IMG/VR virus record: IMGVR_UViG_3300031957_002643
Location: 271,553 to 335,552 of that record
Reading direction: 5' to 3' (one strand)
Length of the DNA: 64,000 bases
Positions 2,553 to 52,193 of the stretch are shown piece by piece. Position 1 is the stretch's first letter, and every line of letters begins with the position of its first letter. The position numbers and the translations under genes are program-made. Below the pieces are notes generated by a model. It was not told the origin of the DNA. It saw only the letters and a program-made list of their open reading frames with translations, and did no database searches.

Positions 2553-2637
2553 GGGGATGTGGCGGAACTGGTAGACGCGACGGATTCAAAATCCGTTTCC
2601 TTATGGAGTGGGGGTTCGAGTCCCTCCATCCCTACCA
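2553..2637 (+). tRNA. trnL: tRNA-Leu (CAA)
   Basis: GGGGATG/CATCCCT acceptor, ACGGA-TTCAAAA-TCCGT anticodon arm, long variable arm, GGTTCGAGTCC, encoded CCA. Confidence 0.95.
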
Positions 2638-2655
2638 AAACCATAGAGGTTCAAT

Positions 2656-2856
2656 ATGAATAATCTTGTACATTGTTATCGGTGTTCGGGAACGTATAAT
2701 TCGAATTTACAATACACTCGTGGATTTGTGACAAAGAGTCATGATACTACCGGTGATGACAATTTTGTTCATACATCAAGTGTGTCAAGCGGCGATTGTC
2801 CCTTTTGTAATAAACCGCCATTATTGGTACCCAAGCAACAATCGTCTGCGATGTAG
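2656..2856 (+). CDS. Small Zn-ribbon-like hypothetical protein
   Basis: CxxC...CxxC (CYRC, CPFC); GAGG SD upstream. Confidence 0.55.
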   Translation: MNNLVHCYRCSGTYNSNLQYTRGFVTKSHDTTGDDNFVHTSSVSSGDCPFCNKPPLLVPKQQSSAM

Positions 2857-2858
2857 TC

Positions 2859-3464
2859 ATGCCTAATAAGAACCCACCGTTTGATAAATCCGTTCTCACC
2901 GACTGTGAATGTCCGGCATCCCTAACACATGACATCCGTAGATATTCATACATAGAACGTGAAGCCCGTCGCAGAAAGCAAGTTGCTGAAGAAGCAAAAC
3001 GGGATATGCGCCAAATCAAAACGGATCGTATCCGTAATGGTGACGATATCATGGTGTCTGAACATGCTGTGCTTAGATATCTTGAAAGAGCCAAGGGCAT
3101 AGATGTTGATGCAATCAGAAAGCATATAATCGGTCTATACCTTGAAGCTGAAGAAGAATATCCGAATGAGTTCGTTACGGATGATTGTGTTCTTCTGCGA
3201 TCCCAAGACAATGAGAACGTGATAACCACGGTTATCACTAAAGAGATGTTCGATGCGGCTGAGCGTCAAATTTCCAGAGATGGTTGGAAACGTGCTAAAG
3301 TAACAAAGCTCAAAGGTCACATGTTTAAAATGTGTGAAACCGACGAAACTATGCTGGAATGCAATCATTGTCATATGATGATGCCGTACACATTTGCGCG
3401 TAAAGAGGTGTTGGATTATCTCAATGAACACGCTCCGGGTAGATGCGTTGATGAACCGATGTAG
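2859..3464 (+). CDS. Hypothetical protein
   Basis: 201-aa ORF with VSEHAVLRYLER motif, in a tightly packed operon. Confidence 0.75.
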   Translation: MPNKNPPFDKSVLTDCECPASLTHDIRRYSYIEREARRRKQVAEEAKRDMRQIKTDRIRNGDDIMVSEHAVLRYLERAKGIDVDAIRKHIIGLYLEAEEEYPNEFVTDDCVLLRSQDNENVITTVITKEMFDAAERQISRDGWKRAKVTKLKGHMFKMCETDETMLECNHCHMMMPYTFARKEVLDYLNEHAPGRCVDEPM

Positions 3465-3475
3465 GAGAACGTCTT

Positions 3476-3805
3476 ATGTATCAACCAGATGGATGGAAAT
3501 TCGTAAAAATAATTTGGCCAACAGGACTTGAAGATATCAGACTTGCTGGTGGATGGTCTGGTGGTTATACCACGGGAGATTCATGGAAGCTCAATTCTGG
3601 TGTGAACCGAATTGAGAAAGGCGATGGATATTATGATGTTGTTGGTGATTCCGGTTCGGTTTATCGGATTAATGAGCACGGTGAAGATCGATCCTTGGCG
3701 CTGACCATGGCTTTTTCTTATCTGGACCAACAATTAGAGAATGGAACTATTGTTTCTTGGGAGAGACTTGATAGTTCTGAGATATTGAATAAAGAATTTG
3801 ACTAA
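3476..3805 (+). CDS. Conserved large-phage hypothetical protein
   Basis: GWSGGYTTGDSWKLNSG motif recalled from large myoviruses; AGGAG SD. Confidence 0.8.
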   Translation: MYQPDGWKFVKIIWPTGLEDIRLAGGWSGGYTTGDSWKLNSGVNRIEKGDGYYDVVGDSGSVYRINEHGEDRSLALTMAFSYLDQQLENGTIVSWERLDSSEILNKEFD

Positions 3806-3839
3806 GGTTTGATTTTGTAATATAAGTATTAGTGAACTT

Positions 3840-3930
3840 GGATAGGTGGCTGAGTGGCTTAAGGCGCTCCCCTGCTAAGGGAGTGGGCACATTGTGTGTC
3901 CCGTGGGTTCAAATCCCACCCTATCCGCCA
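3840..3930 (+). tRNA. trnS: tRNA-Ser (GCT)
   Basis: GGATAGG/CCTATCC acceptor, CTCCC-CTGCTAA-GGGAG, long variable arm, encoded CCA. Confidence 0.95.
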
Positions 3931-4308: not shown

Positions 4309-4603
4309 TCTCTTTATCAATAATTTCGGACTAAAACCAGAACAAAAGTTACCCTTCATCCGTCCATGGTTGGGAAGAGGGTATCGGTTATATGTATTTG
4401 TTGATTATAGATATATTCAGAAGTGTCCAGAACGCATTAATGTAATGGCGGACTATGCTGCCATTTATAAAGGCCTCCATGAAAAGGCCTTTAAAGATAG
4501 ATCAGGCAAGAAGATACCATGTTTGGTTAGTGATCCATATGAGAGATCAATGGTCAGAGGGTGCATGATCGCACTACCTGATCAGTTTGAATTCAAGCGT
4601 TAA
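4262..4603 (+). CDS. Hypothetical protein
   Basis: ORF of about 113 aa converging on pth2. Confidence 0.55.
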   Translation: MPMSRIRRLDKIKRIDLFINNFGLKPEQKLPFIRPWLGRGYRLYVFVDYRYIQKCPERINVMADYAAIYKGLHEKAFKDRSGKKIPCLVSDPYERSMVRGCMIALPDQFEFKR

Positions 4604-4604
4604 C

Positions 4605-4976
4605 TTAGATAAGCATTTTCAGGTTGCTTAGTGTTTCTTCACGGTCTGCCGGATCAATCGGACCAATTCCCAGACAGGTCACAGTCGGTTCATTGAATAC
4701 AGTACGACCAGCATCTTTTACCAAAGATACACCACATTTCTTTTTGTAAAGATCAAATAACTCGAACAATTCTTTTGTGGTTTCAACTGCGAGTGTGATT
4801 TTCACTGCGGACTGGCTGTCCTTATATTGGGTTGCAAGTTCCGGTGTTCGTTCCAAAGCATCCCAATAAGCATGTAGGTAGGCATGCCCGGCTTGTGCGG
4901 CCAGTTTACCTCTGTTGCCGTTCATGGCCTTCAGTGCTTCTTTACTGACGACACAATAGATTTTCAATTCACTCAT
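4605..4976 (-). CDS. pth2: Peptidyl-tRNA hydrolase type 2 (Pth2)
   Basis: GKLAAQAGHA, KITL, VKDAGRT and TCLGIGP are PTH2 family motifs; GAGGAG SD before MSELK. Confidence 0.9.
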   Translation of the reverse strand: MSELKIYCVVSKEALKAMNGNRGKLAAQAGHAYLHAYWDALERTPELATQYKDSQSAVKITLAVETTKELFELFDLYKKKCGVSLVKDAGRTVFNEPTVTCLGIGPIDPADREETLSNLKMLI

Positions 4977-4994
4977 TTTGGTCTCCTCATATGA

Positions 4995-5018
4995 GAATGG
5001 GGACCGAAGTCCCCATTC
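4995..5018 (-). other. 10-bp cUUCGg hairpin between rsr and pth2
   Basis: GAATGGGGAC-TTCG-GTCCCCATTC on the minus strand; no U-tract, so possibly a stabiliser or processing site. Confidence 0.6.
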
Positions 5019-5026
5019 CAATCAGC

Positions 5027-6643
5027 TTAGCGAACAAAGTCCGCCATAACGTTTGGTGCATTGGAATCAAATCCAACAACGTCGAGCATGCCCGGATCAT
5101 CAGGATTTGCAATCGTGAAGCCCGTTGAGGTCATGCCAACAACGATGAGCTTCGCATCGATGCCCATCTTGCGACGGTAATCACGAAGCGCTTCGTGTGG
5201 ATGGATATTACCTGCCCAAGTTTCATTATCCGTGTAGATAACGAAAGCATCAGCTTCGATCTTGTTTTCCATTGCGTAAAGCATTGGAGCAGCACAATCA
5301 GTTCCACCGAATGGAAGATTGCTGATCTTACGGATAACACCATCAAGTGTTGATGCACGACCAAAGTCAAGCGGAGTTACCGCATTAGAGCCACGGTAAG
5401 ACGAATAACGCGAACCACTGGTAAAACCGACAGTGTGTGTAACTGGTTCGGTCTTCATAGTGATAAGTGCCATTGCCGCAGATGCGTCACGTGGCGTGAT
5501 GTTTGAATTCATGATGTTCGAAAACGTCATAGAACCTGAAACATCAAGCGCAAGAAGATGACGCTTTCCAGTCGGAACAACATTCTTGAAAGAAAGCTTG
5601 AATGCATCTTCAAGTGCAGACACAATGTTTCCATTGACCTTCCACGTGTTGCTTCCACGGAAACCACGACCAGACTTATACGTTGTGAGTGCAAGAAGCA
5701 CCGCAAACGGATGAATCATCGAATCGTGAAGCGTCTTCTGATCCGTGAGCCGACGAACTGCCTCCTGTTCAAACTTGGACATCGGCTTGAAAAGATTAAT
5801 CTTTTCAGAAGACATGTTGCCAAGATTTTTGATCATAGCAGTCATCGGCATCTTTTCGAAAAGTGCTTCCCATACCTTTGGATCATTAAGAGCCTCGGTC
5901 GGAAGTGCTTCACGTGGAAGATTTGCTTCACGGATAAGGCCCGGAAGTTCCTTCACAGATGCAGTCTTTGCTTCTTCGTATGCCTTGATGATTGGCGGAA
6001 GCGTTTCGGTATCAACCGGGCGACCACAAATCCAATCAAAGATCACGCGACGTTCTGCTTCTGGCGTCTTTGGATGAGAAAGACGAAGAAGGTCACGGTG
6101 CGTCCAACCATCACGTTGACGATACTTGACCGCTTGGTAAGCGACCTTGTTTGCATCAACTTCGGTATACCAGTTCGCAACTGCACGCTTAAGCGCACGT
6201 CCCCAACCACGGAACTGTTCGACAAATTCCGCGTAATGGAAAAGATGCGTACCAATGCGTGCAACCTTTGGAAGTGCCGCGAGCGCATATGCACGAGTCT
6301 TGTCATCTTGTGCAGCCGAAGCCATAGCAAGAGCGAAAAGAGCAGCATCATTACGGTATGCACGACCGTTCGTGGACACGTCAACAATCATATCGACAGC
6401 ACGAATACCGTCAGAATCAATTGCCTTCTGTACTGCCGAAGCGTTAGCTACGGTAAGTTCACGAGACGATGCGTAGTAGGTTGGTGCATCAGAACCGAGC
6501 ACAAGGAAGCGCTCAAGGCGACCGAACTCATCAAGTGTGAATGAGAAACCGCCAGCATTGTTCTTGGATTGCTTTGGGGAAGCCGCTTCATTTTGCGGCG
6601 TAACGCGATTGCGCGTTCCAACATTACGGTAAGCTTTAGACAT
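5027..6643 (-). CDS. rsr: Ro60 / Rsr TROVE-domain RNA-binding protein
   Basis: NNAGGF, RLERFLVLGS..TYY, KYRQRDGWTHRDLLRL and MPMTAMIKNLG, plus vWA motifs LALDVSGSM, GGTDCAAPM and IYTDNETW. Confidence 0.95.
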   Translation of the reverse strand: MSKAYRNVGTRNRVTPQNEAASPKQSKNNAGGFSFTLDEFGRLERFLVLGSDAPTYYASSRELTVANASAVQKAIDSDGIRAVDMIVDVSTNGRAYRNDAALFALAMASAAQDDKTRAYALAALPKVARIGTHLFHYAEFVEQFRGWGRALKRAVANWYTEVDANKVAYQAVKYRQRDGWTHRDLLRLSHPKTPEAERRVIFDWICGRPVDTETLPPIIKAYEEAKTASVKELPGLIREANLPREALPTEALNDPKVWEALFEKMPMTAMIKNLGNMSSEKINLFKPMSKFEQEAVRRLTDQKTLHDSMIHPFAVLLALTTYKSGRGFRGSNTWKVNGNIVSALEDAFKLSFKNVVPTGKRHLLALDVSGSMTFSNIMNSNITPRDASAAMALITMKTEPVTHTVGFTSGSRYSSYRGSNAVTPLDFGRASTLDGVIRKISNLPFGGTDCAAPMLYAMENKIEADAFVIYTDNETWAGNIHPHEALRDYRRKMGIDAKLIVVGMTSTGFTIANPDDPGMLDVVGFDSNAPNVMADFVR

Positions 6644-6699
6644 TTTCCTTCTCCTTTACGTCTTTTGTGAACTAAGGATTAGGACGAGTCAAGAGGGTT

Positions 6700-6765
6700 G
6701 AATGAACATGTTAGTTGCGGTGGGTGTTTCATCGAAAAAGATAACCCATTGCATCCGGCTCATTC
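6700..6765 (-). ncRNA. Short Y-RNA-like element (copy A)
   Basis: 5' GAAUGAGCCGGAUGCAAUGGGUUAUC pairs with 3' GUUCAUUC; sits in the rsr leader. Confidence 0.75.
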
Positions 6766-6775
6766 AAATTTCATA

Positions 6776-6945
6776 CAGTTGTACCTTAGAAGGATGGACG
6801 TGTTTTTGAAAAACGACGTTTAGACGCTCTAACCGTTGAGCTACCGGCCCATAAATGGTGGGCCAGACAGGATTCGAACCTGTAACCTTCCCTTTGTAAG
6901 AGGATAACCGTCTCTCAGCCGGTCCATCCTTCTAAGATACAACTG
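6776..6945 (-). ncRNA. YrlA-like Y RNA with circularly permuted tRNA module
   Basis: 24-bp terminal stem, GGUUAUC motif, then T arm (CAGGUUCGAAUCCUG), loop-closed acceptor GGCCCA-CCAUUUA-UGGGCC and D arm (UAGCUCAACGGUUAGAGC). Confidence 0.88.
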
Positions 6946-7079
6946 GACGAATGTGTTTGCGACTAGGGGGTGTTGAGACCAATGCTTCTACCAATTCAGC
7001 CACACCCAACAATGTGTTGAGTGACAGGATTCGAACCTGCACTTCTCGGTTTTGATAACCCTATGTCTCCGACTCGTCC
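6945..7079 (-). ncRNA. Second YrlA-like Y RNA with circularly permuted tRNA module
   Basis: GGACGAGU/AUUCGUCC terminal stem, GGGUUAUC, T arm GCAGGUUCGAAUCCUGU, closed acceptor CACUCAAC..GUUGGGUG and D arm UGGCUGAAUUGGUAGAAGC. Confidence 0.85.
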
Positions 7080-7105
7080 GAAATCTTTTGTTCCTCCCAT
7101 TGATT

Positions 7106-7172
7106 GAATGAACATGTTAGTTGTGATGGATGTTCATCATTACCAAGATAACCCACCGCATCCGGCTCATTC
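7106..7172 (-). ncRNA. Short Y-RNA-like element (copy B)
   Basis: Near-duplicate of 6700-6765 (identical 18-nt and 15-nt ends); 5' GAAUGAGCCGGAUGCGGUGGGUUAUC. Confidence 0.75.
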
Positions 7173-7188
7173 GTTGTTCCGTGATATA

Positions 7189-7214
7189 CTTATAGAGGAT
7201 AATAGGGGTGTCAA
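7189..7214 (-). promoter_or_regulatory. Putative promoter for the Y RNA-rsr-pth2 operon
   Basis: TTGACA and TATAAG match this phage's motif, but the spacer is an atypical 14 nt. Confidence 0.4.
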
Positions 7215-7249
7215 CCGGTTTTTTGTAAAAAATCGAAAATTTTTTGTAA

Positions 7250-7278
7250 TTGACAGGAATTCCTCTGTGTCATATAAG
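7250..7278 (+). promoter_or_regulatory. Sigma70-type promoter
   Basis: TTGACA-N17-TATAAG. Confidence 0.8.
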
Positions 7279-7296
7279 TATTAGCACACATCTTGA

Positions 7297-7373
7297 AGCG
7301 GGGTGGAGCAGTCCGGTAGCTCGTCAGACTCATAATCTGAAGGTCGTAGGTTCAAATCCTGCCCCCGCACCCA
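7297..7373 (+). tRNA. trnM: tRNA-Met (CAT), initiator-like body
   Basis: Body closely matches tRNA-fMet, with a 1:72 mismatch; anticodon arm TCAGA-CTCATAA-TCTGA; encoded CCA. Confidence 0.9.
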
Positions 7374-7387
7374 TTATAGGAATGATC

Positions 7388-7588
7388 ATGTCCAAGCATT
7401 CGAATGAACCCGAAGAAATTACGAATGATCGGAAATCAATCCATATCACGATTCCATCAAAGGGATGGAAGACAATTAGTGCTTGTGCAATGATTGTCGC
7501 AGCCATTTCATTCGCAGTTGCGGGCGGTGATCAAAGTTATCTGGCTGGATGGTGTATTCTTGGAGCATTCGTGGCATTGTGGGATTAA
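7388..7588 (+). CDS. Small membrane protein
   Basis: ATG after AGGA; two hydrophobic segments. Confidence 0.55.
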   Translation: MSKHSNEPEEITNDRKSIHITIPSKGWKTISACAMIVAAISFAVAGGDQSYLAGWCILGAFVALWD

Positions 7589-8987: not shown

Positions 8988-9365
8988 ATGAAAATTGATC
9001 GTCTATTTGAAGAAACCGTGAAACTCTCCGACATGTATGATGTCGATGATCTGCATGATGATGCAGAAATCCTGTATCATTACATCGATCCAGACCAGTT
9101 GGATGATGAATTCGAAGTTAAAGAATTATCTTTTGATGAAGCCAAGAAATTAAAAACGCCTCGTGGTGATATGACTGTTTGGCAAGCGTATAAAGATCAT
9201 GCGATGCCTGAACAGGAAGACATCATCAAAAAGAAATTGAAAAATTATGATTCGGATCGAGTGATTGTTGTTTATGATGATCAGGTTTTAGACGGGAACC
9301 ATCATTTGATTGCATCATTGAAACAAAAACTTGGCGTTCGCCTGATTGATATTAAGACGATCTAA
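8988..9365 (+). CDS. ParB/Srx-like domain protein
   Basis: VIVVYDDQVLDGNHHLIA resembles the ParB N-terminal DG(H/N)HR motif; N-terminal LFE. Confidence 0.55.
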   Translation: MKIDRLFEETVKLSDMYDVDDLHDDAEILYHYIDPDQLDDEFEVKELSFDEAKKLKTPRGDMTVWQAYKDHAMPEQEDIIKKKLKNYDSDRVIVVYDDQVLDGNHHLIASLKQKLGVRLIDIKTI

Positions 9366-9849
9366 TTTTCATCCACAATTCACCGAGCACATTGTACCCA
9401 ACCCAATTATCACCTTCTCTGGCAGCGCCCCAAAACTTCCCGCTACCATGAGGACGACTGGTGACATCTTCAATTAATCGTCTTTCTCCGGTTTCGGCCA
9501 ACATATTCATGAGTTCTTCATGCTGTTGGACCTTCAACATCAAACACAGTTCCATGTTGTCGAGGTCTTCGGTGCCAGTTTGAAGAACAGTCATATGTTC
9601 GGCATTCCCTTTGGCGTAGAATTTTGCCGACATTGGAGACTTGATAGTCTTGAGATGCAGAAAGTGTTCACTTTCAAAAGGAAAGCGCATAGCCTGAAAC
9701 AAATGTTCAGTCGTTGGAAATAGGTGATCTTTGTAAGTGACTGAAAATGCAGCCATATTTTGCATCCAACCAAAAGGAAGTTTCACTTTAGTGAAAGCGA
9801 TGTCATCTTCTTGGCATGGATTAATCGGGTAGTCTGTAAGTTTGCTCAT
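9352..9849 (-). CDS. NADAR (DUF1768/YbiA) family protein
   Basis: FPTTEHLFQAMRF, SPMSAK, LAETGERRLIE, FWG and G.NVLGELWMKIR. Confidence 0.88.
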   Translation of the reverse strand: MSKLTDYPINPCQEDDIAFTKVKLPFGWMQNMAAFSVTYKDHLFPTTEHLFQAMRFPFESEHFLHLKTIKSPMSAKFYAKGNAEHMTVLQTGTEDLDNMELCLMLKVQQHEELMNMLAETGERRLIEDVTSRPHGSGKFWGAAREGDNWVGYNVLGELWMKIRSS

Positions 9850-10267
9850 CGTTTTCTTCCATGAAATTAAAAATTCGGTCGGACCAGTAGTCATCGAATG
9901 ATGCAAGAGTCCGTGTAAGCTTATATACAGCAGTTGTCAATGCGTCATAATCTTTTGCCTTCCAACTTGTATATGTGCGAGCACAAAGACCAAGTATAGA
10001 CATAGTATAAGCTAATGGGTTATCTTTATTATTTCGATCTTCAATTTCTTTTTTGACCAATTCAAAACGGTCTTCTGTTGTGAAATGGCTTTCATTGTTT
10101 GCCGCAATGCGGAGTGCACAATGAAGCGTCAGGTCAACCAAAATCTGTCTGCGAAAATTAGAACATCCATAGATGATTTTTCTTATTTCTTCCTTTGGAT
10201 CAAATAATTGTTTGATTTCATTATCCAAATCGTCGAGGTCAATATCTATGTCGATTTCATTTTCCAT
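9821..10267 (-). CDS. Hypothetical protein
   Basis: ATG at 10267 (MENEIDID); overlaps the NADAR start. Confidence 0.65.
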   Translation of the reverse strand: MENEIDIDIDLDDLDNEIKQLFDPKEEIRKIIYGCSNFRRQILVDLTLHCALRIAANNESHFTTEDRFELVKKEIEDRNNKDNPLAYTMSILGLCARTYTSWKAKDYDALTTAVYKLTRTLASFDDYWSDRIFNFMEENDEQTYRLPD

Positions 10268-10296
10268 GGCAATATGTATATATCGAATTTTTCTTG

Positions 10297-10325
10297 TTGA
10301 CAAAAGAAATCGAAACACCTATAAG
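10297..10325 (+). promoter_or_regulatory. Sigma70-type promoter for the NAD salvage operon
   Basis: TTGACA-N17-TATAAG. Confidence 0.8.
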
Positions 10326-10381
10326 TATGCATAACGAAGCACCGCCGAAGGTGCATTGACGATAGTAGCGTGGAGTATGCT

Positions 10382-11515
10382 ATGCCTGTGAATGGAAAAC
10401 CATCCATCCGTGATGGGTTCGTGAAAACGAATACACTCGGATATGAAGAAGAATACGATTACCTCGTATTCATTGGAAGATTTCAACCTCTCCATTACGG
10501 GCATATGCGTGTCATTGACATTGCGCTACAACTCTCCAAAAAAGTAGTTCTGCTCGTTGGTTCGTCCAATGTTGGTCGCACCCTGCGTAACCCGTTCACT
10601 TTTCAAGAACGTTACGCCATGATCGCAACACAATACGATCATGCCATCAAGGATGGTCGTCTCATCATCGACTCAATCGATGATATGATGTATGAAGATG
10701 ACCGCTGGATCGAGCAGGTTCAGACCAAAGTCAACAGCAAAGTTGGCGATACCAAAAATGTCGGTCTGATTGGATGTGAGAAAGATCACACCAGTTATTA
10801 TCTCAGCCTCTTCCCGAACTGGCATAATGTCGGTGTGGAATTCAAGGTTCCACTCAACAGTACCGATATCCGCAAGGCTGTGTTCCTTCAGGACAAGCTC
10901 TGGGATGATCGTGGTTTTGGTGAAACGCAACATGCCAAGAATGAATTCTACAAATTCTTGGACAAGGCGTGCCCGCCAGAAATCGCTCAAATCCTTCACG
11001 CATTTATGTACAATCCAACAGCAGAAGAAATTCGTGAAGAATGGAAGTGGATCAATGAATATCGTGCAAAGCGCCAGACCAGCAATTATCCGGTGATTGA
11101 TATCACTGTTGATGCCTGCGTGGTTCAATCTGGTCATGTTCTGGTTGTTCGCCGCAAGAATTATCCGGGCAAAGGTCTTCTTGCCCTTCCGGGTGGTTTC
11201 TTGAATGAAAACGAAATTCGCGAGAAGGGCATGCTTCGTGAATTGCGAGAAGAAACTTGCATCGATCTCTCGGATACTGTCCTTCGCGCAAATATCGTGA
11301 AAGAAAAAGTTTTCGAAGACCCACACCGTTCAGATCGTGGTCGTCTGATTACGACTGCATATCTGATCAAACTTCAGGATCGCCCGGAACTTCCCAAGGT
11401 GAAGGGTGCTGATGATGCAGAGAAAGCATTCTGGTTGCCATTGTCCGAAGTAAAACCTTCGATCTTCTTTGAAGACCATGGATTCATTATCCGAAATCTC
11501 ACGAGCGGAATCTAA
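10382..11515 (+). CDS. nadM: Bifunctional NMN adenylyltransferase / ADP-ribose Nudix hydrolase (NadM-Nudix, NatV-like)
   Basis: FIGRFQPLHYGH (HIGH-type), LNSTDIR, Nudix box GGF.N.NE....GMLRELREE, GADDA, FFEDH. Confidence 0.95.
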   Translation: MPVNGKPSIRDGFVKTNTLGYEEEYDYLVFIGRFQPLHYGHMRVIDIALQLSKKVVLLVGSSNVGRTLRNPFTFQERYAMIATQYDHAIKDGRLIIDSIDDMMYEDDRWIEQVQTKVNSKVGDTKNVGLIGCEKDHTSYYLSLFPNWHNVGVEFKVPLNSTDIRKAVFLQDKLWDDRGFGETQHAKNEFYKFLDKACPPEIAQILHAFMYNPTAEEIREEWKWINEYRAKRQTSNYPVIDITVDACVVQSGHVLVVRRKNYPGKGLLALPGGFLNENEIREKGMLRELREETCIDLSDTVLRANIVKEKVFEDPHRSDRGRLITTAYLIKLQDRPELPKVKGADDAEKAFWLPLSEVKPSIFFEDHGFIIRNLTSGI

Positions 11516-11526
11516 GGAGAATCGTC

Positions 11527-11712
11527 ATGGCAGTTAAAGTAAGTGAAATGTGTAAGCTGACGAGAACTTGTCGCAAGTGTGAAACCGTTCTCGAATTCGA
11601 ATACACGGATATTACAACCCATAAGGTCAATTTTGATTATCTGGGAGATTACGATACCCGAAGAGGTGTAAAGTGTCCCGTATGTGAAAACGTAGTGGAG
11701 GTTACGAAATGA
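11527..11712 (+). CDS. Small Zn-ribbon protein
   Basis: CRKC...CPVC; AAGGAG SD. Confidence 0.7.
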   Translation: MAVKVSEMCKLTRTCRKCETVLEFEYTDITTHKVNFDYLGDYDTRRGVKCPVCENVVEVTK

Positions 11713-12083
11713 CTATCAATTTTGAAGATAAAGAGCGTGCTATCGAACGCGAGCGTCGTGCTATCGAAGATGAACGTGTTCGACTGGCAGAACGCCAAAA
11801 GGCTCTAGAACAGGAAGAAACCGACAACAGAGAACTTGCGGCGAAAATGAAATACGAGAATGATCCTCGTATCCCTATCGCCATCCAGCTTCACACGCTC
11901 ATGTGTAATCACAATCATATTGATGGTTGTAGCTGGTCGTATGAGAGCAAGTGGCACGACTGGAATATTGGTTGGGCACGCAAGGAATATCTCAAAAAGG
12001 CGACCCGTGTCGTGGACATGGCAAATAAATTGGGCATCAAACCTGAAGATGCTCTGGAAATCATCAAAGCAGTGAAAGGGTAA
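11709..12083 (+). CDS. Hypothetical protein
   Basis: Coiled-coil N-terminus, HTLMCNHNHIDGC; ATGA overlap. Confidence 0.75.
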   Translation: MTINFEDKERAIERERRAIEDERVRLAERQKALEQEETDNRELAAKMKYENDPRIPIAIQLHTLMCNHNHIDGCSWSYESKWHDWNIGWARKEYLKKATRVVDMANKLGIKPEDALEIIKAVKG

Positions 12084-12087
12084 TCCA

Positions 12088-13542
12088 ATGCTTAATAATC
12101 CTATTATCGAACTCATTCTCGCAAACAAAGTCATTTCAACGGACAGCTACAAGTTCTCTCACTGGACTCAGTATCCGCCGAATACGACACATGTTTCGAG
12201 CTACATCGAATCCCGTGGTCTTTCCAGTGAAGTGAAAGATGATTGGGAAGATGAAGTCGTTTTCTTCGGCCTGCAAGGCTTCATCAAACGTTACCTCATG
12301 ACGCCGATCACCATGAAGATGGTCGATGAAGCCGAAGAATACTGCAAGGCGCATGGTGAACCATTCAACCGTGCTGGTTTCGAAATCATCGTGAATGAAT
12401 ATGATGGCTTCTATCCTGTTGAAATTGAAGCGGTTCCAGAAGGAACTGTTATGCGTTCTCACAACGCACAGGTTCAAGTCGTCAATACGGATGAACGTCT
12501 GTTTTGGGTGACTTCATTCCTCGAAACGTCTCTTCTCCGTGCAGTGTGGTATCCTTCTACGGTTGCTACTCAAAGCCGCGAAATCAAAAAAGTCATTGCA
12601 TCCTACATGGATGAAACGGCTGGACATCGTGAAGGTCTCGATTTTAAACTCCATGACTTTGGTGCTCGCGGTGTAAGCAGTGCAGAATCCGCTATGATCG
12701 GTGGTTCCTCCCATCTGGTCAATTTCATGGGGACTGATACTGGTGAAGCAAATCTCTGGCTTCGTGCTCTCTATGGTGAAGACATGGCAGCATTCTCTGT
12801 GCCTGCCAGTGAACACAGCACCATGACGAGTTGGGGTGGTCCTGCTGGCGAGGTGGATGCATGTCGCAACATGTTGGAAACCTTTGCTGGTCGCTTCCCG
12901 ATCATCTCTGTGGTTTCTGACAGCTATGACATTTATCGTTGCATCACTGACATTTGGGGTGGTGAACTGTACGAAGATGTCAAGGCGCTTGAAAAGGTCG
13001 GAAGCAAACTTGTTGTTCGTCCTGACTCGGGTGACCCGACGACTGTTCCTGTTGAATGCATCAAGCTTCTGATGGAAAAGTTCGGGTACACCACGAATGA
13101 ACGTGGTTACAAGGTTCTTCCTCCGTTCGTCGGTGTTCTTCAAGGTGATGGTATCAACATCCGTTCGATCCGCCAAATCCTTGAAAACATGAAGAAAGAA
13201 GGCCTGTCCGCCGAAAACATCGTGTTCGGTATGGGTGGTGCCCTTCTTCAAAAGGTTGACCGTGATACCTTGAAGTATGCGATGAAGGCATCTGCTCGAA
13301 AGACTGATGGTGAATGGCATGATGTCTTCAAGCAGCCGGTCACGGATAAGGGCAAGATGTCCAAGAAAGGCCGTCTGGTTGTTGTTGAAACTTTGGGTGT
13401 TGGTGCTCGTGGTCATCTGACTGTTCGTGCCGATGCCATGCTTTCGACCGACAAGAACTTGCTTCGCCCGGTCTATCGTAATGGGGAACTTCTCATGGAT
13501 GATAGCTTGACGGATATCCGCAAACGCGCTAGTATCCGTTAG
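12088..13542 (+). CDS. nadV: Nicotinamide phosphoribosyltransferase (NAMPT/NadV)
   Basis: TDSYKFSH, LHDFGARG, PASEHS, VSDSYD, VRPDSGDP, QGDGI and FGMGGALLQKVDRDT. Confidence 0.95.
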   Translation: MLNNPIIELILANKVISTDSYKFSHWTQYPPNTTHVSSYIESRGLSSEVKDDWEDEVVFFGLQGFIKRYLMTPITMKMVDEAEEYCKAHGEPFNRAGFEIIVNEYDGFYPVEIEAVPEGTVMRSHNAQVQVVNTDERLFWVTSFLETSLLRAVWYPSTVATQSREIKKVIASYMDETAGHREGLDFKLHDFGARGVSSAESAMIGGSSHLVNFMGTDTGEANLWLRALYGEDMAAFSVPASEHSTMTSWGGPAGEVDACRNMLETFAGRFPIISVVSDSYDIYRCITDIWGGELYEDVKALEKVGSKLVVRPDSGDPTTVPVECIKLLMEKFGYTTNERGYKVLPPFVGVLQGDGINIRSIRQILENMKKEGLSAENIVFGMGGALLQKVDRDTLKYAMKASARKTDGEWHDVFKQPVTDKGKMSKKGRLVVVETLGVGARGHLTVRADAMLSTDKNLLRPVYRNGELLMDDSLTDIRKRASIR

Positions 13543-22305: not shown

Positions 22306-22379
22306 GCGGGTGTAGCTCAATGGTAGAGCCACTGCCTTCCAAGCAGAAGACGAGAGTTCGATTCTCTCCATCCGCTCCA
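22306..22379 (+). tRNA. trnG: tRNA-Gly (TCC)
   Basis: GCGGGTG/CATCCGC acceptor, CTGC-CTTCCAA-GCAG, encoded CCA. Confidence 0.93.
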
Positions 22380-22388
22380 AACATTCAT

Positions 22389-22464
22389 GGCGCTGTAGCT
22401 CAGTTGGCAGAGCAGGAGACTCATATTCTCTGTGTCGGCGGTTCGATCCCGTCCAGCGCTACCA
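22389..22464 (+). tRNA. tRNA with CAT anticodon (elongator Met or Ile2)
   Basis: GGCGCTG/CAGCGCT acceptor, GGAGA-CTCATAT-TCTCT, encoded CCA. Confidence 0.9.
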
Positions 22465-29585: not shown

Positions 29586-29661
29586 GCGGGTGTAGCTTAG
29601 TGGCTAAAGCGTCTGGTTGCCATCCAGAAGATCGCGGGTTCGAATCCCGCCATCCGCTCCA
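29586..29661 (+). tRNA. trnG: tRNA-Gly (GCC)
   Basis: GCGGGTG/CATCCGC acceptor, CTGG-TTGCCAT-CCAG, encoded CCA. Confidence 0.93.
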
Positions 29662-51528: not shown

Positions 51529-51685
51529 CGATTAAAATTTTTTCTTGTTGACAATGCTTTCGATTTGTCCTATAAGTATATTCATGATCAACATGTGGAA
51601 CATCTTCCAGCAATTCGCACCACAACCCGCTTAAGCGCGGGAACAGATCACTTTTACCTAAAATTCGAATAACGTTTGTGACTAG

Positions 51686-51762
51686 CTAGGCGTAGCTCAG
51701 TCAGGCAGAGTACCGGTTTTGGAAACCGGGGGTCGTTGGTTCAAATCCAACCGTCTAGACCA
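51686..51762 (+). tRNA. trnP: tRNA-Pro (TGG)
   Basis: CTAGGCG/CGTCTAG acceptor, CCGGT-TTTGGAA-ACCGG, encoded CCA. Confidence 0.92.
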
Positions 51763-51778
51763 AACGTTCTAAAACCAT

Positions 51779-51852
51779 CAGGGTATAGCTTAGTGGTAGA
51801 GTATCGCACTCGGAATGCGAGGGCGAAGGTTCGATTCCTTCTACCCTGACCA
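51779..51852 (+). tRNA. trnP: tRNA-Pro (CGG)
   Basis: CAGGGTA/TACCCTG acceptor, TCGCA-CTCGGAA-TGCGA, encoded CCA. Confidence 0.92.
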
Positions 51853-51877
51853 AAAATAGAGGTAAAGATGAATAACG

Positions 51878-52111
51878 GTGGTTAACATGATCGATATCAA
51901 AAGAGCCGTCTCGAACGAGAATACAGTTGAATTCCAATACTACTTTGATGGTAGTCTTTGGTACAAAGAAATCAGTGGTGTAGTTTTTCCTGTCCCGGTA
52001 GAGGATATTGGAACAGCGACATTTAATAGAACAGAGAAAGCACTTCTCATGATGCGTTACATGCGGAAGTATAACAAAATGAAAGAGGAAAGTATGAATA
52101 CTGGTGCTTGA
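51878..52111 (+). CDS. Conserved large-phage hypothetical protein
   Basis: LWY...FPVPVEDIGTATF...KA..MRY motif; GAGG SD. Confidence 0.75.
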   Translation: MVNMIDIKRAVSNENTVEFQYYFDGSLWYKEISGVVFPVPVEDIGTATFNRTEKALLMMRYMRKYNKMKEESMNTGA

Positions 52112-52117
52112 TCTTAA

Positions 52118-52193
52118 TGGGGGATAGCTCAATTGGTAGAGCATTCGGTTTTGGTCCGAAAGGTTGCAGGTTCGAGTCCTGCTCCCCCAGCCA
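52118..52193 (+). tRNA. trnQ: tRNA-Gln (TTG)
   Basis: TGGGGGA/TCCCCCA acceptor, TTCGG-TTTTGGT-CCGAA, encoded CCA. Confidence 0.93.

What the first reader, a model, noticed from the sequence alone, without database searches (positions are those of the whole stretch)
6700..7172. Duplicated minimal (~66-nt) Y RNAs that can cross-pair to wrap the whole cluster
Seen: copies A (6700-6765) and B (7106-7172) share identical ends. Within each copy the upper stem has mismatches, but B's 5' UGCGGUGGG (7152-7160) is perfectly complementary (9/9) to A's 3' CCCACCGCA (6716-6724), and the GAAUGAGC/GUUCAUUC ends are interchangeable. The 5' motif GCCGGAUGCGGUGGGUUAUC resembles the vertebrate Y4 5' sequence as I recall it (GUCCGAUGGUAGUGGGUUAUC; verify). 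Inference: either two minimal Y RNAs or one ~470-nt composite Y RNA enclosing two tRNA modules.
Basis: partly seen in the sequence, partly recalled or inferred. Interest (0 to 1): 0.6.

Follow-up and report, generated by a model that had tools for sequence, protein, structure and literature searches.

The report
Phage Y RNA array before Ro60
The two ~66-nt copies are real small stem-loop Y RNAs, the first and last of four Y RNA genes that a marine jumbo phage carries in front of its Ro60 (rsr) gene. Their ability to pair with each other is peculiar to this one genome and is not a conserved design.

Summary
Copies A (6700-6765) and B (7106-7172), both on the minus strand, share identical ends. 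B's 5' arm pairs perfectly (10/10) with A's 3' arm. Equilibrium folding of the whole 491-nt stretch puts that 'wrap' at P~0.99.

The context changes the reading. The window is the end of a 335-kb marine jumbo phage. The region is a four-unit Y RNA array: mini, tRNA-like, tRNA-like, mini. It has its own promoter and lies directly upstream of a Ro60/Rsr gene. Each of the four units, including both tRNA-like modules, closes with its own Ro-type stem.

Six related phage arrays keep this layout. In the four relatives that have both minis, each mini pairs with itself, with compensatory changes, and the first-5'/last-3' cross duplex is 2-14 kcal/mol weaker than the first unit's own stem. Across 160 unit pairs in other phage loci, a cross duplex beats the unit's own arms only once, by 0.1 kcal/mol. 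The within-copy mismatches sit at the two stem positions that are least paired across the family, and two distant phages carry the same A.C/A.C pair.

So the 'two minimal Y RNAs' option is supported and the composite Y RNA is not. This is a new member of a known kind (YrlA/YrlB-type Y RNAs next to rsr). Separately, unit 2's 5' arm is conservedly complementary to the rsr leader.

The parts
7186..7214 (-). Promoter-like site TTGACA-N16-TAAGTAT (core TATAAGTAT) that would start transcription a few bases upstream of unit 1
   Evidence: There is one match on this strand, against 0.01 expected by chance. TTGACA/TTGATA followed after 16-17 nt by TAAGTAT stands before the array in six relatives. The TATAAGTAT motif also precedes tRNAs at 3840, 7297 and 51686 and the gene at 10370. 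The generic sigma-70 scanner did not score it.
7106..7172 (-).
   Evidence: R1 scores it 68.7 bits, E 4.9e-15. Rfam RF01656 scores it 28.8 bits. It folds alone at -18.4 kcal/mol.
6944..7080 (-). Unit 2: a tRNA-like (YrlA-type) Y RNA with its own closing stem (GGACGAGU / AUUCGUCC, motif GUCGGAG, GGGUUAUC), a T-arm, an acceptor-like hairpin and a D-like arm
   Evidence: R1 scores it 29.5 bits with an 80-nt insert. The consensus structure over six phages has 31 pairs, 15 of them with compensatory changes. Rfam YrlA gives a partial match of 15.1 bits.
6776..6945 (-). Unit 3: a YrlA-like Y RNA with a long closing stem of about 24-30 bp and a circularly permuted tRNA mimic. The mimic has an anticodon-like hairpin (loop CUUACAA), a T-arm, an acceptor hairpin whose loop begins CCA, and a D-arm.
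   Evidence: Rfam YrlA RF02553 scores it 40.5 bits, E 1.9e-7, below the gathering score of 69. R1 scores it 31.2 bits. Inverted repeat I1 has 30-nt arms. The consensus structure over seven phages has 37 pairs, 23 of them compensatory.
6700..6765 (-).
   Evidence: R1 scores it 75 bits, E 1.3e-16. Rfam RF01656 scores it 35.8 bits. It folds alone at -18.0 kcal/mol.
6682..6692 (-). rsr leader element UUGACUCGUCC, complementary to the 5' arm of unit 2 (GGACGAGUCGG, 7079-7069). It lies about 30-40 nt upstream of the rsr start codon.
   Evidence: This is inverted repeat I2. The duplex is -24.0 kcal/mol, reached by 1 of 500 shuffles. In five arrays, 51 of 55 core cells are paired, and two positions change on both sides.
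5027..6643 (-). rsr: Ro60 orthologue, 538 aa
   Evidence: Pfam TROVE scores 3e-41 and vWA_Ro60 1e-66. PDB matches are 2NVO (D. radiodurans Rsr, 5e-121) and 1YVP (Xenopus Ro60, 8e-110).
4605..5021 (-). Peptidyl-tRNA hydrolase PTH2 gene directly downstream of rsr on the same strand; probably in the same operon
   Evidence: Pfam PTH2 scores 2e-19. No terminator-like site was found on the minus strand anywhere in 4500-7500, so none separates the array, rsr and this gene.
7297..7373 (+). Divergently transcribed tRNA-Met(CAT) with the same promoter motif. Its neighbourhood with the array is conserved.
   Evidence: ARAGORN finds it and Rfam tRNA scores it 59.8 bits. A divergent tRNA stands next to the array in L003, L005 and L011.

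Best explanation
Region 6700-7172 (minus strand) is a four-gene Y RNA array of a marine jumbo phage. One sigma-70-like promoter (7214-7186) most likely transcribes it together with the downstream Ro60/rsr gene.

The units, in order, are:
- unit 1: a minimal stem-loop Y RNA (copy B)
- units 2 and 3: tRNA-like, YrlA-type Y RNAs
- unit 4: a second minimal stem-loop Y RNA (copy A)

Every unit closes on itself with the same kind of stem. That stem has a lower helix, a bulged C inside a GNCG(G/A)A-N-G motif, and an upper helix ending in GGGUUAUC. This is the type of site that Ro60 proteins bind.

The likely mechanism, which is inferred, is as follows. The precursor is cut into four RNAs. Each loads one phage Rsr ring through its stem. 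The tRNA-like modules recruit host partners such as PNPase or tRNA enzymes. The minis act as plain stabilisers or gates of Rsr, like YrlB and Yrn2.

Copies A and B are paralogues whose ends have been made identical by recent duplication or gene conversion. The perfect B5'/A3' complementarity is a by-product of that shared ancestry plus a few transitions. It is not a designed clamp around the cluster.
For: What is shown:
- Rsr is a full-length Ro60 orthologue.
- The stem model R1 hits exactly four adjacent places in the window.
- The array is conserved in six related phages with Rsr 63-78% identical. Four keep GGTTATC motifs at about -520, -425, -267 and -105 from the rsr ATG; L008 and L011 carry two and three of them.
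- The mini hairpin structure covaries. 90.5% of cells are paired against 76% in shuffles, and 14 of 21 pairs change on both sides.
- Units 2 and 3 each have their own covarying closing stems and tRNA-like cores.
- In relatives, units 1 and 4 fold as separate domains. Within-unit arm duplexes sum to 7-19 kcal/mol more stable than the cross duplexes.
- The two A.C positions of copy A are the least paired of the family, at 37/49 and 34/50, against at least 46/50 at the other upper-stem pairs (44/50 at its first pair).
- L012 unit 1 and L035 carry the same GCAAUGGG/CCCACCGC arms.
- Only 1 of 160 cross-unit arm pairs in other phage loci beats the unit's own arms, by 0.1 kcal/mol.
- The promoter motif recurs before tRNA genes in the window.

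From the literature:
- Y RNAs lie within 2 kb of rsr in 254 bacteria and 22 phages.
- In M. smegmatis, YrlA and YrlB lie upstream of rsr and are cut from one precursor. All three points are from PMC4201824.
- Thermus phage phiLo has two Y-like RNAs upstream of its Ro60, and they assemble with host PNPase (PMC12135203).
Against: - There are no expression data. Only seawater DNA runs hold this sequence, so transcription, processing and Rsr binding are all inferred.
- Rfam scores fall below the curated thresholds: YrlA 40.5 against 69, and sbRNA 35.8 and 28.8 against 38.
- The motif in this phage is GCCGGAUG, one base away from the published GNCGAA.
- For this genome the nearest-neighbour model favours the wrap by about 8-9 kcal/mol over local folds. 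If the precursor is long-lived and reaches equilibrium, the local hairpins A and B would not be the dominant form.
Confidence: 0.8

Rival explanations
1. Composite 'wrapped' Y RNA. In this phage the primary transcript folds so that B's 5' arm and A's 3' arm form one perfect Ro-type stem closing a ~400-nt loop. That loop holds both tRNA-like modules. The ~470-nt RNA, or the helix acting as a processing signal, would be the functional form.
For: The complement is 10/10. The cross duplex is -26.3 kcal/mol against -16 for each copy's own arms. The wrap appears in the MFE and the centroid with pair probabilities of about 0.99. This preference is an outlier among 160 unit pairs in other phage arrays, so it is not a routine by-product of having several units.
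Against: - It is not conserved. In L003, L004, L005 and L012 the first and last units have different lower stems that pair only with themselves, and no wrap is predicted.
- Both enclosed modules have their own covarying closing stems, so no outer stem is needed.
- The mismatches within the copies are a family trait.
- During transcription, hairpin B is complete about 400 nt before A's 3' arm exists, and A's 3' arm emerges right next to A's 5' arm. Local hairpins are therefore favoured kinetically (inference).
- Identical ends are the expected result of recent duplication or gene conversion.
Confidence: 0.07
2. Long-range helices in the unprocessed array-rsr precursor are regulatory. The conserved pairing between unit 2's Ro-binding 5' arm and the rsr leader would serve as an RNase III-type processing site or as a switch. 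The B5'/A3' pairing in this phage would act in the same way. Such a switch would couple Y RNA folding or Rsr occupancy to rsr translation. This would add to the four-unit array model rather than replace it.
For: The duplex between unit 2's 5' arm and the leader is -24.0 kcal/mol, reached by 1 of 500 shuffles. It is also present in L003, L004, L005 and L012, where 0 to 14 of 500 shuffles reach the observed value. 51 of 55 core cells are paired. Both-side changes occur at two positions: G-C to A-U, and G-C (G-U in this phage) to A-U. The element keeps a distance of 30-42 nt from the ATG. The repeat finder reports it independently as I2.
Against: There are only four independent sequences. The leader element resembles unit 2's own 3' strand (UCGUCC), so it could be a relic of a lost unit that is kept similar for other reasons. 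No such complementarity is seen in more distant arrays. The controls were mononucleotide shuffles only. There are no RNA data.
Confidence: 0.2
3. A and B are not Y RNAs but generic repeated hairpins, such as attenuators, terminators or REP-like elements, that happen to flank tRNA-like genes.
For: No expression or binding data exist. Rfam scores fall below the gathering thresholds.
Against: Neither hairpin has a U-tract or terminator-like site. The hairpins occur only here in 335 kb. Their conserved single-stranded and bulge motifs (CCG[A/G]A, GGGUUAUC) match Y and sbRNA consensus. The same stem closes the tRNA-like units and recurs next to rsr in many unrelated phage contigs.
Confidence: 0.03

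Closest known systems
Bacterial and phage YrlA/YrlB Y RNAs next to rsr (Chen et al. 2014, PMC4201824), especially the M. smegmatis YrlA-YrlB-rsr locus
   Same: The ncRNA genes lie on the same strand directly upstream of rsr. At least one has a T-arm, acceptor and D-arm tRNA mimic, and at least one is a plain hairpin with a pyrimidine-rich loop. The motif near the 5' end is of the GNCGAA-N0-1-G type; relatives have GCCGAAUG exactly. A common precursor is expected. Unit 3 has a 7-bp acceptor-like stem, like the M. smegmatis RNA that RNase P cleaves.
   Different: There are four units (five in L003) instead of two. This phage has CGGA in place of CGAA. Unit 3 carries an extra anticodon-like hairpin and an encoded CCA. 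The Rfam YrlA score is only 40.5 against a threshold of 69. The two minis share identical ends.
Thermus phage phiLo Ro60 with Yrl1 and Yrl2 (PMC12135203)
   Same: A phage-encoded Ro60 with several Y-like RNAs immediately upstream of its gene. Host PNPase is a plausible partner.
   Different: The phiLo protein is only distantly related (E 6e-6, against 5e-121 for D. radiodurans Rsr). I did not compare the RNAs themselves. Nothing has been tested experimentally for the phage studied here.
Metazoan Y RNAs and nematode stem-bulge RNAs (Rfam RF01656)
   Same: A terminal stem with a bulged C, a CCG(A/G)A motif on the 5' strand, and an upper helix ending in UGGGUUAUC. The scores fall just under the sbRNA gathering threshold. 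L012 unit 1 reaches it, at 38.1 against 38.
   Different: The minis are much shorter (66 nt against ~100-130). They have almost no internal loop region and no polyuridine tail. They are transcribed as an array from a bacterial-type promoter. No match to the metazoan Y_RNA model was listed.
D. radiodurans Yrn1/Yrn2 and the Rsr-Y RNA-PNPase (RYPER) machine
   Same: The Rsr here is most similar to the D. radiodurans protein (2NVO). The pairing of one tRNA-like Y RNA with a simple hairpin Y RNA is the same logic.
   Different: PNPase tethering is untested here. No PNPase gene turned up among the window ORFs I scanned, which covered only part of the window.

Membership tests
Y RNA (Ro60/Rsr-associated ncRNA) | Encoded close to rsr (within about 2 kb) on the same strand | tested here: met
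   The array spans 6700-7172(-). rsr occupies 6643-5027(-) and carries TROVE and vWA_Ro60 domains.
Y RNA (Ro60/Rsr-associated ncRNA) | The 5' and 3' ends form a bulged helix carrying the Ro-binding motif (GGUCCGA in animals, GNCGAA-N0-1-G in bacteria) | tested here: met
   All four units have the stem. The motif is GCCGGAUG, GUCGGAG or ACCGGCUG here, one base off the published form. It is exactly GCCGAAUG or GCCGAAGG in relatives. The stem covaries.
Y RNA (Ro60/Rsr-associated ncRNA) | Bound and stabilised by Ro60/Rsr | not testable with these tools
   No RNA runs hold the locus. This needs immunoprecipitation or EMSA.
Rfam YrlA (RF02553) | Score at or above the curated gathering threshold (69 bits) | tested here: not met
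   Unit 3 scores 40.5 bits (E 1.9e-7, full-length model match) and unit 2 scores 15.1 bits. Relatives score 31.9-38.3 bits.
YrlA-type tRNA-like Y RNA (Chen 2014 definition) | A T-arm (GGUUCGAAUCC), an acceptor-like hairpin and a D-arm, enclosed by the Ro-binding stem | tested here: met
   Consensus structures with compensatory pairs were obtained for unit 3 (37 pairs, 23 compensatory) and unit 2 (31 pairs, 15 compensatory).
YrlB/Yrn2-type plain hairpin Y RNA | A long hairpin with the Ro motif and a small pyrimidine-rich loop, and no tRNA-like domain | tested here: met
   A and B fold as single hairpins (-18.0 and -18.4 kcal/mol) with loops starting UUAUCUU. The description of the class is in PMC4201824. 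No sequence homology to Salmonella YrlB was tested.
Rfam sbRNA (RF01656) | Score at or above the gathering threshold (38 bits) | tested here: not met
   A scores 35.8 and B scores 28.8. L012 unit 1 scores 38.1. This is a resemblance of the Ro-binding stem, not membership of the nematode family.
   Cross duplexes in L003, L004, L005 and L012 are -12.7 to -19.0 kcal/mol, against -21.5 to -27.1 for the first unit's own arms. Lower stems differ between the units. MFE folds keep the units separate.

The most novel reading that the evidence does not exclude
The unprocessed array-rsr transcript uses long-range helices as working parts. One is the clade-conserved pairing between unit 2's Ro-binding 5' arm (7079-7069) and the rsr leader (6692-6682). 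The other, in this phage only, is the perfect B5'/A3' stem. Both would compete with the local Y RNA stems. Rsr loading or precursor processing would then decide whether the rsr leader is free. That would make a Y RNA-based autoregulatory switch for a Ro60 gene.
Probability: 0.15. Interest if true: 0.6.

Novelty: new member of a known kind. Interest (0 to 1): 0.35.

Why it matters
Y RNAs next to rsr are known in bacteria and in some phages, so the class is not new. Three things do come out of this locus.

- A compact, conserved four-unit array (two minimal and two tRNA-like Y RNAs plus Ro60) exists in a clade of marine jumbo phages.
- A family of ~65-nt minimal Y RNAs is widespread in phage contigs. 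Rfam does not call them at its gathering thresholds.
- Units within one array normally keep mutually incompatible stems. The window's A/B pair is a rare exception and offers a natural test of whether cross-pairing between array members matters.

If confirmed, the conserved complementarity between one Y RNA's Ro-binding strand and the rsr leader would be the first hint of cis-regulation of a Ro60 gene by its own Y RNA.

Tried and rejected
- The search for related loci with the single Rsr protein found no relatives in the viral contigs.
- An exact WIN-type motif search in the viral contigs found nothing. A degenerate motif then gave 52 loci, of which roughly half are coding-sequence chance hits.
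- The generic promoter scanner missed the conserved promoter because its -10 element is unusual.
- Sequencing-run search found only seawater DNA runs. I therefore did not use read laying, and I have no data on RNA ends.
- Two other contigs of the same phage (L070, L071) are identical over the 726 nt upstream of rsr, including the array, so they add nothing.
- P0005's contig has no upstream DNA.
- L013/L014 (Rsr 55% identical) have a different upstream layout, and I left them out of the array comparison.
- MAFFT shifted the upper stem of L004 and L005 unit 4 by one column, so their 4/9 score is an alignment artefact. The duplex energies do not depend on the alignment.
- The whole-array alignment A5 misaligns the leader, so I counted leader pairing with an anchored script instead.
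- The test for leader complementarity in distant arrays was unclean. Undetected units sit inside my 'leaders', and no pattern emerged.
- Two reviews (PMC10870794, PMC6047535) are not held.
- I did not type the vertebrate Y4 sequence from memory, so that likeness was checked only through Rfam models.
- I rejected a terminator or REP-like reading of A and B (see the rival explanations).

Full report
**What is there**

The window is the last 64 kb of a 335,552-bp IMG/VR virus record with direct terminal repeats, so it comes from a jumbo phage. Only seawater metagenome DNA runs hold the sequence.

The finding lies on the minus strand. Reading 5' to 3' on that strand, the features are:
- a promoter-like site, TTGACA-N16-TAAGTAT (7214-7186)
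- copy B (7172-7106)
- a tRNA-like module (7080-6944)
- a second tRNA-like module with a long stem (6945-6776)
- copy A (6765-6700)
- a 56-nt leader
- a 538-aa ORF (6643-5027)
- a PTH2 peptidyl-tRNA hydrolase gene

The 538-aa ORF has TROVE (3e-41) and Ro60-vWA (1e-66) domains. It matches D. radiodurans Rsr at 5e-121 and Xenopus Ro60 at 8e-110. A divergent tRNA-Met gene sits on the other side of the promoter region.

**Checking the observation**

- A and B share their first 15 and last 18 bases.
- B's 5' upper arm and A's 3' upper arm are complementary over 10/10 bases (6716-6725 with 7151-7160).
- Within the copies, B has one C.A mismatch and two G.U pairs. A has two adjacent A.C mismatches.
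- Arm duplex energies are -16.0 (B/B), -16.3 (A/A) and -26.3 kcal/mol (B5'/A3').
The MFE is 8.4 kcal/mol better than the best fold limited to local pairs.

The likeness to Y RNA is also real. The Rfam nematode stem-bulge RNA model, which I take from my own knowledge to represent Y RNA homologues, aligns to both copies through the bulged-C and CCGGA...UGGGUUAUC stem. It scores 35.8 and 28.8 bits against a threshold of 38.

**What the cluster is**

I built a covariance model (R1) from 13 mini hairpins of this phage and six relatives. It finds exactly four matches in the 64-kb window. They are the two minis and, with 77- and 80-nt insertions, the two tRNA-like modules. At E<=1 it finds only the two minis in the whole phage genome.

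So each tRNA-like module already has its own Ro-type closing stem:
- unit 2: GGACGAGU-C-GGAGACAUAGGGUUAUC ... CCCCUAGUC ... AUUCGUCC
- unit 3: GGAUGGAC-C-GGCUGAGAGACGGUUAUC ... GUCGUUUUUCA ... GUCCAUCC, extended to a 30-nt inverted repeat

Rfam's YrlA model aligns over its full length to unit 3 (40.5 bits, E 1.9e-7), but below its gathering score of 69. The region is therefore a tandem array of four Y RNA-like genes, not two hairpins flanking naked tRNA modules.

**Comparative evidence**

The protein word search found Rsr relatives at 63-78% identity. I fetched their contigs.

Six distinct relatives carry an array upstream of rsr. Four of them (L003, L004, L005, L012) have the same four-unit layout, with GGTTATC motifs at about -520, -425, -267 and -105 from the start codon. 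All six have TTGACA (TTGATA in L011) followed after 16-17 nt by TAAGTAT in front. L003 has an extra tandem mini. L011 has three units. L008 has a reduced unit 2.

The mini hairpin structure is strongly supported. 90.5% of cells are paired against 76% in shuffles and about 40% when the partner is slid. 14 of 21 pairs change on both sides. Units 3 and 2 give consensus structures of 37 and 31 pairs, with 23 and 15 compensatory pairs. These cover their own closing stems, a T-arm, an acceptor-like hairpin and a D-arm.

**The test of the wrap**

In the four relatives that have both minis, the first and last units have different lower stems, and each is self-complementary. In L004, for example, the stems are GGUGGCGAGC/GUUCGCCAUC and AAAACGAGC/GUUCGUUUU.

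Alignment-free duplex energies show the same thing. The first unit's own arms give -21.5 to -27.1 kcal/mol, while first-5'/last-3' gives -12.7 to -19.0. The summed within-unit energies beat the summed cross energies by 7-19 kcal/mol in every relative. In the window the order is reversed. MFE folds of the relatives' whole arrays keep units 1 and 4 as separate hairpins.

A degenerate motif search pulled 52 further phage loci. R1 found 82 units in these and the relatives' loci. Many stand in arrays of 2-7 units, most of them next to rsr genes only 39-55% identical to the window's where an rsr lies within the fetched DNA.

Among 160 ordered pairs of units that share a locus, a cross-unit arm duplex beats the unit's own only once, by 0.1 kcal/mol. 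Units of one array normally keep mutually incompatible stems. The window's A/B pair is the exception, and it goes with their homogenised ends.

**The mismatches are a family trait**

Across 50 distinct short units, the two stem positions that are A.C/A.C in copy A are the least paired of the stem. They are paired in 37/49 and 34/50 units, against at least 46/50 at the other upper-stem pairs (44/50 at its first pair).

L012 unit 1 (Rsr 63% identical) and L035 (Rsr about 55% identical) carry the very same GCAAUGGG/CCCACCGC arms. So copy A's state is old or recurrent.

All five differences between the upper stems of A and B are transitions. Two of them only turn G-C into G.U. The simplest history is that two paralogous hairpins share a 3'-arm sequence, and one of them (B) has a 5' arm fully matched to it. 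Cross-complementarity then comes for free.

**Most likely mechanism**

What is shown:
- a promoter motif that also precedes tRNA genes at 3840, 7297 and 51686 and the gene at 10370
- no terminator-like site between the array and rsr
- four self-closing units with a Ro-type stem
- a bona fide Ro60 gene

What is inferred from the literature:
- As in M. smegmatis, YrlA and YrlB lie upstream of rsr and are cut from one precursor. The characterised species each have one tRNA-like Y RNA and one plain hairpin (PMC4201824).
- As in Thermus phage phiLo, two upstream Y-like RNAs bind the phage Ro60 and host PNPase (PMC12135203).
- By analogy, the array here is transcribed with rsr and processed into four RNAs. 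Each loads a phage Rsr ring. The tRNA-like modules recruit host partners, and the minis act as simple stabilisers or gates.

Kinetics also favour local hairpins. B is complete about 400 nt before A's 3' arm is made, and that arm emerges right next to A's own 5' arm. This is inference; I could not simulate co-transcriptional folding.

**What remains open**

For this one genome the equilibrium model clearly prefers the wrap. That preference is an outlier in the family, so a role in the unprocessed precursor cannot be excluded. I put it at about 7%.

I also noticed a different long-range complementarity that is conserved. Unit 2's 5' arm (GGACGAGUCGG, 7079-7069) matches the rsr leader just after unit 4 (UUGACUCGUCC, 6692-6682). 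The duplex is -24.0 kcal/mol and only 1 of 500 shuffles reaches it. The match recurs in L003, L004, L005 and L012, with 51 of 55 core cells paired and two positions changed on both sides. It sits at a constant 30-42 nt from the ATG. Distant arrays do not show it. It could be a processing or autoregulatory helix, or a relic of a lost unit.

**Comparison with known systems and verdict**

The locus works like, and by most testable criteria is, a YrlA/YrlB-type Y RNA locus. The ncRNA genes lie beside rsr on the same strand, each closes with a motif-bearing bulged terminal stem, one class is a tRNA mimic and one is a plain hairpin. It fails the Rfam gathering thresholds, and Rsr binding is untested.

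Jumbo phages with TROVE proteins and a tRNA-like partner RNA are already noted in the literature (PMC7824862). The novelty is that of a new member: a four-unit array, a widespread minimal Y class in phages, and a unit 3 that is an unusually complete permuted tRNA mimic. It is not a new kind.

The 'two minimal Y RNAs' option is supported, and the composite, cluster-wrapping Y RNA is not.

Noticed in passing
window 7069-7079 (-) with 6682-6692 (-); also L003, L004, L005, L012: The Ro-binding 5' arm of tRNA-like unit 2 is complementary to the rsr leader just downstream of unit 4. The core is 11 bp (-24 kcal/mol, 1 of 500 shuffles). It is conserved in five arrays, with two both-side changes, at 30-42 nt from the rsr ATG. 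It may be a processing or autoregulatory helix, or a relic of a lost unit.
   Followed up: partly
window 6776-6945 (-), unit 3; alignment A3: Unit 3 looks like a complete circularly permuted tRNA set inside a Y stem. It has an anticodon-like 4-bp stem with the 7-nt loop CUUACAA (U33- and A37-like positions; relatives have CUUGUAA). It also has a T-arm and a 7-8-bp acceptor hairpin whose loop reads A-CCA-UUUA, that is, an encoded discriminator plus CCA. L012 shares the CCA. The anticodon-like hairpin is a 16-nt insertion relative to the Rfam YrlA model. RNase P cleavage like that of M. smegmatis YrlA seems plausible.
   Followed up: partly
window 3821, 7186-7214 (-), 7250-7281 (+), 10297-10328 (+), 51548-51579 (+): A phage promoter-like motif, TTGAC(A/T)-N16-20-TATAAGTAT, occurs five times. 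Each time it stands in front of a tRNA gene or cluster, the Y RNA array, or the NMNAT/NUDIX gene. Five of the six TAAGTAT heptamers in the window (both strands) are in this context. The array promoter and the tRNA-Met promoter are divergent and 78 nt apart.
   Followed up: partly
IMG/VR loci L017, L019, L021-L023, L035, L036, L046, L052, L055, L056, L058, L065: Arrays of 2-7 Y RNA-like units, a mix of ~65-nt minis and ~130-nt tRNA-like units, are common in phage contigs. Most lie directly upstream of rsr. L023 holds five units spread over ~6 kb with no rsr in the fetched stretch. Rfam does not call these minis at gathering thresholds.
   Followed up: partly
family alignment A2, stem pairs 20/152 and 21/151 (in copy A: 6750/6719 and 6749/6720): Two adjacent positions in the middle of the upper stem are non-canonical in about a quarter to a third of mini Y RNAs (A.C, C.C, U.U, G.A). 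The flanking pairs are nearly always Watson-Crick. This suggests a tolerated or wanted distortion of the helix at that spot.
   Followed up: partly
window 9352-13542: An NAD-related gene cluster lies next to the RNA locus. It comprises a NADAR-domain protein (9352-9906, -), a cytidylyltransferase-like/NUDIX fusion that looks NMNAT-like (10370-11515, +) and a NAMPT/NAPRTase-family enzyme (12088-13542, +). It looks like a phage NAD-salvage module. The NMNAT/NUDIX and NADAR genes are also near the array in relatives (L004, L008, L011, L012).
   Followed up: no
window 2553-3927, 7297-7373, 22306-22461, 29586-29658, 51686-52190: The window holds at least nine tRNA genes, and a PTH2 peptidyl-tRNA hydrolase gene sits directly after rsr. 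The Y RNA/Ro60 locus lies in a translation and tRNA-maintenance part of the genome.
   Followed up: no
L008 5071-6549 (-): In one relative, an IS605 OrfB / Cas12f-like TnpB gene sits just downstream of rsr.
   Followed up: no
window 6866-6882 and 7023-7039: The T-arms of units 2 and 3 are identical over 17 nt (CAGGUUCGAAUCCUGUC on the RNA strand). This suggests that the two tRNA-like units are paralogues or exchange sequence.
   Followed up: no
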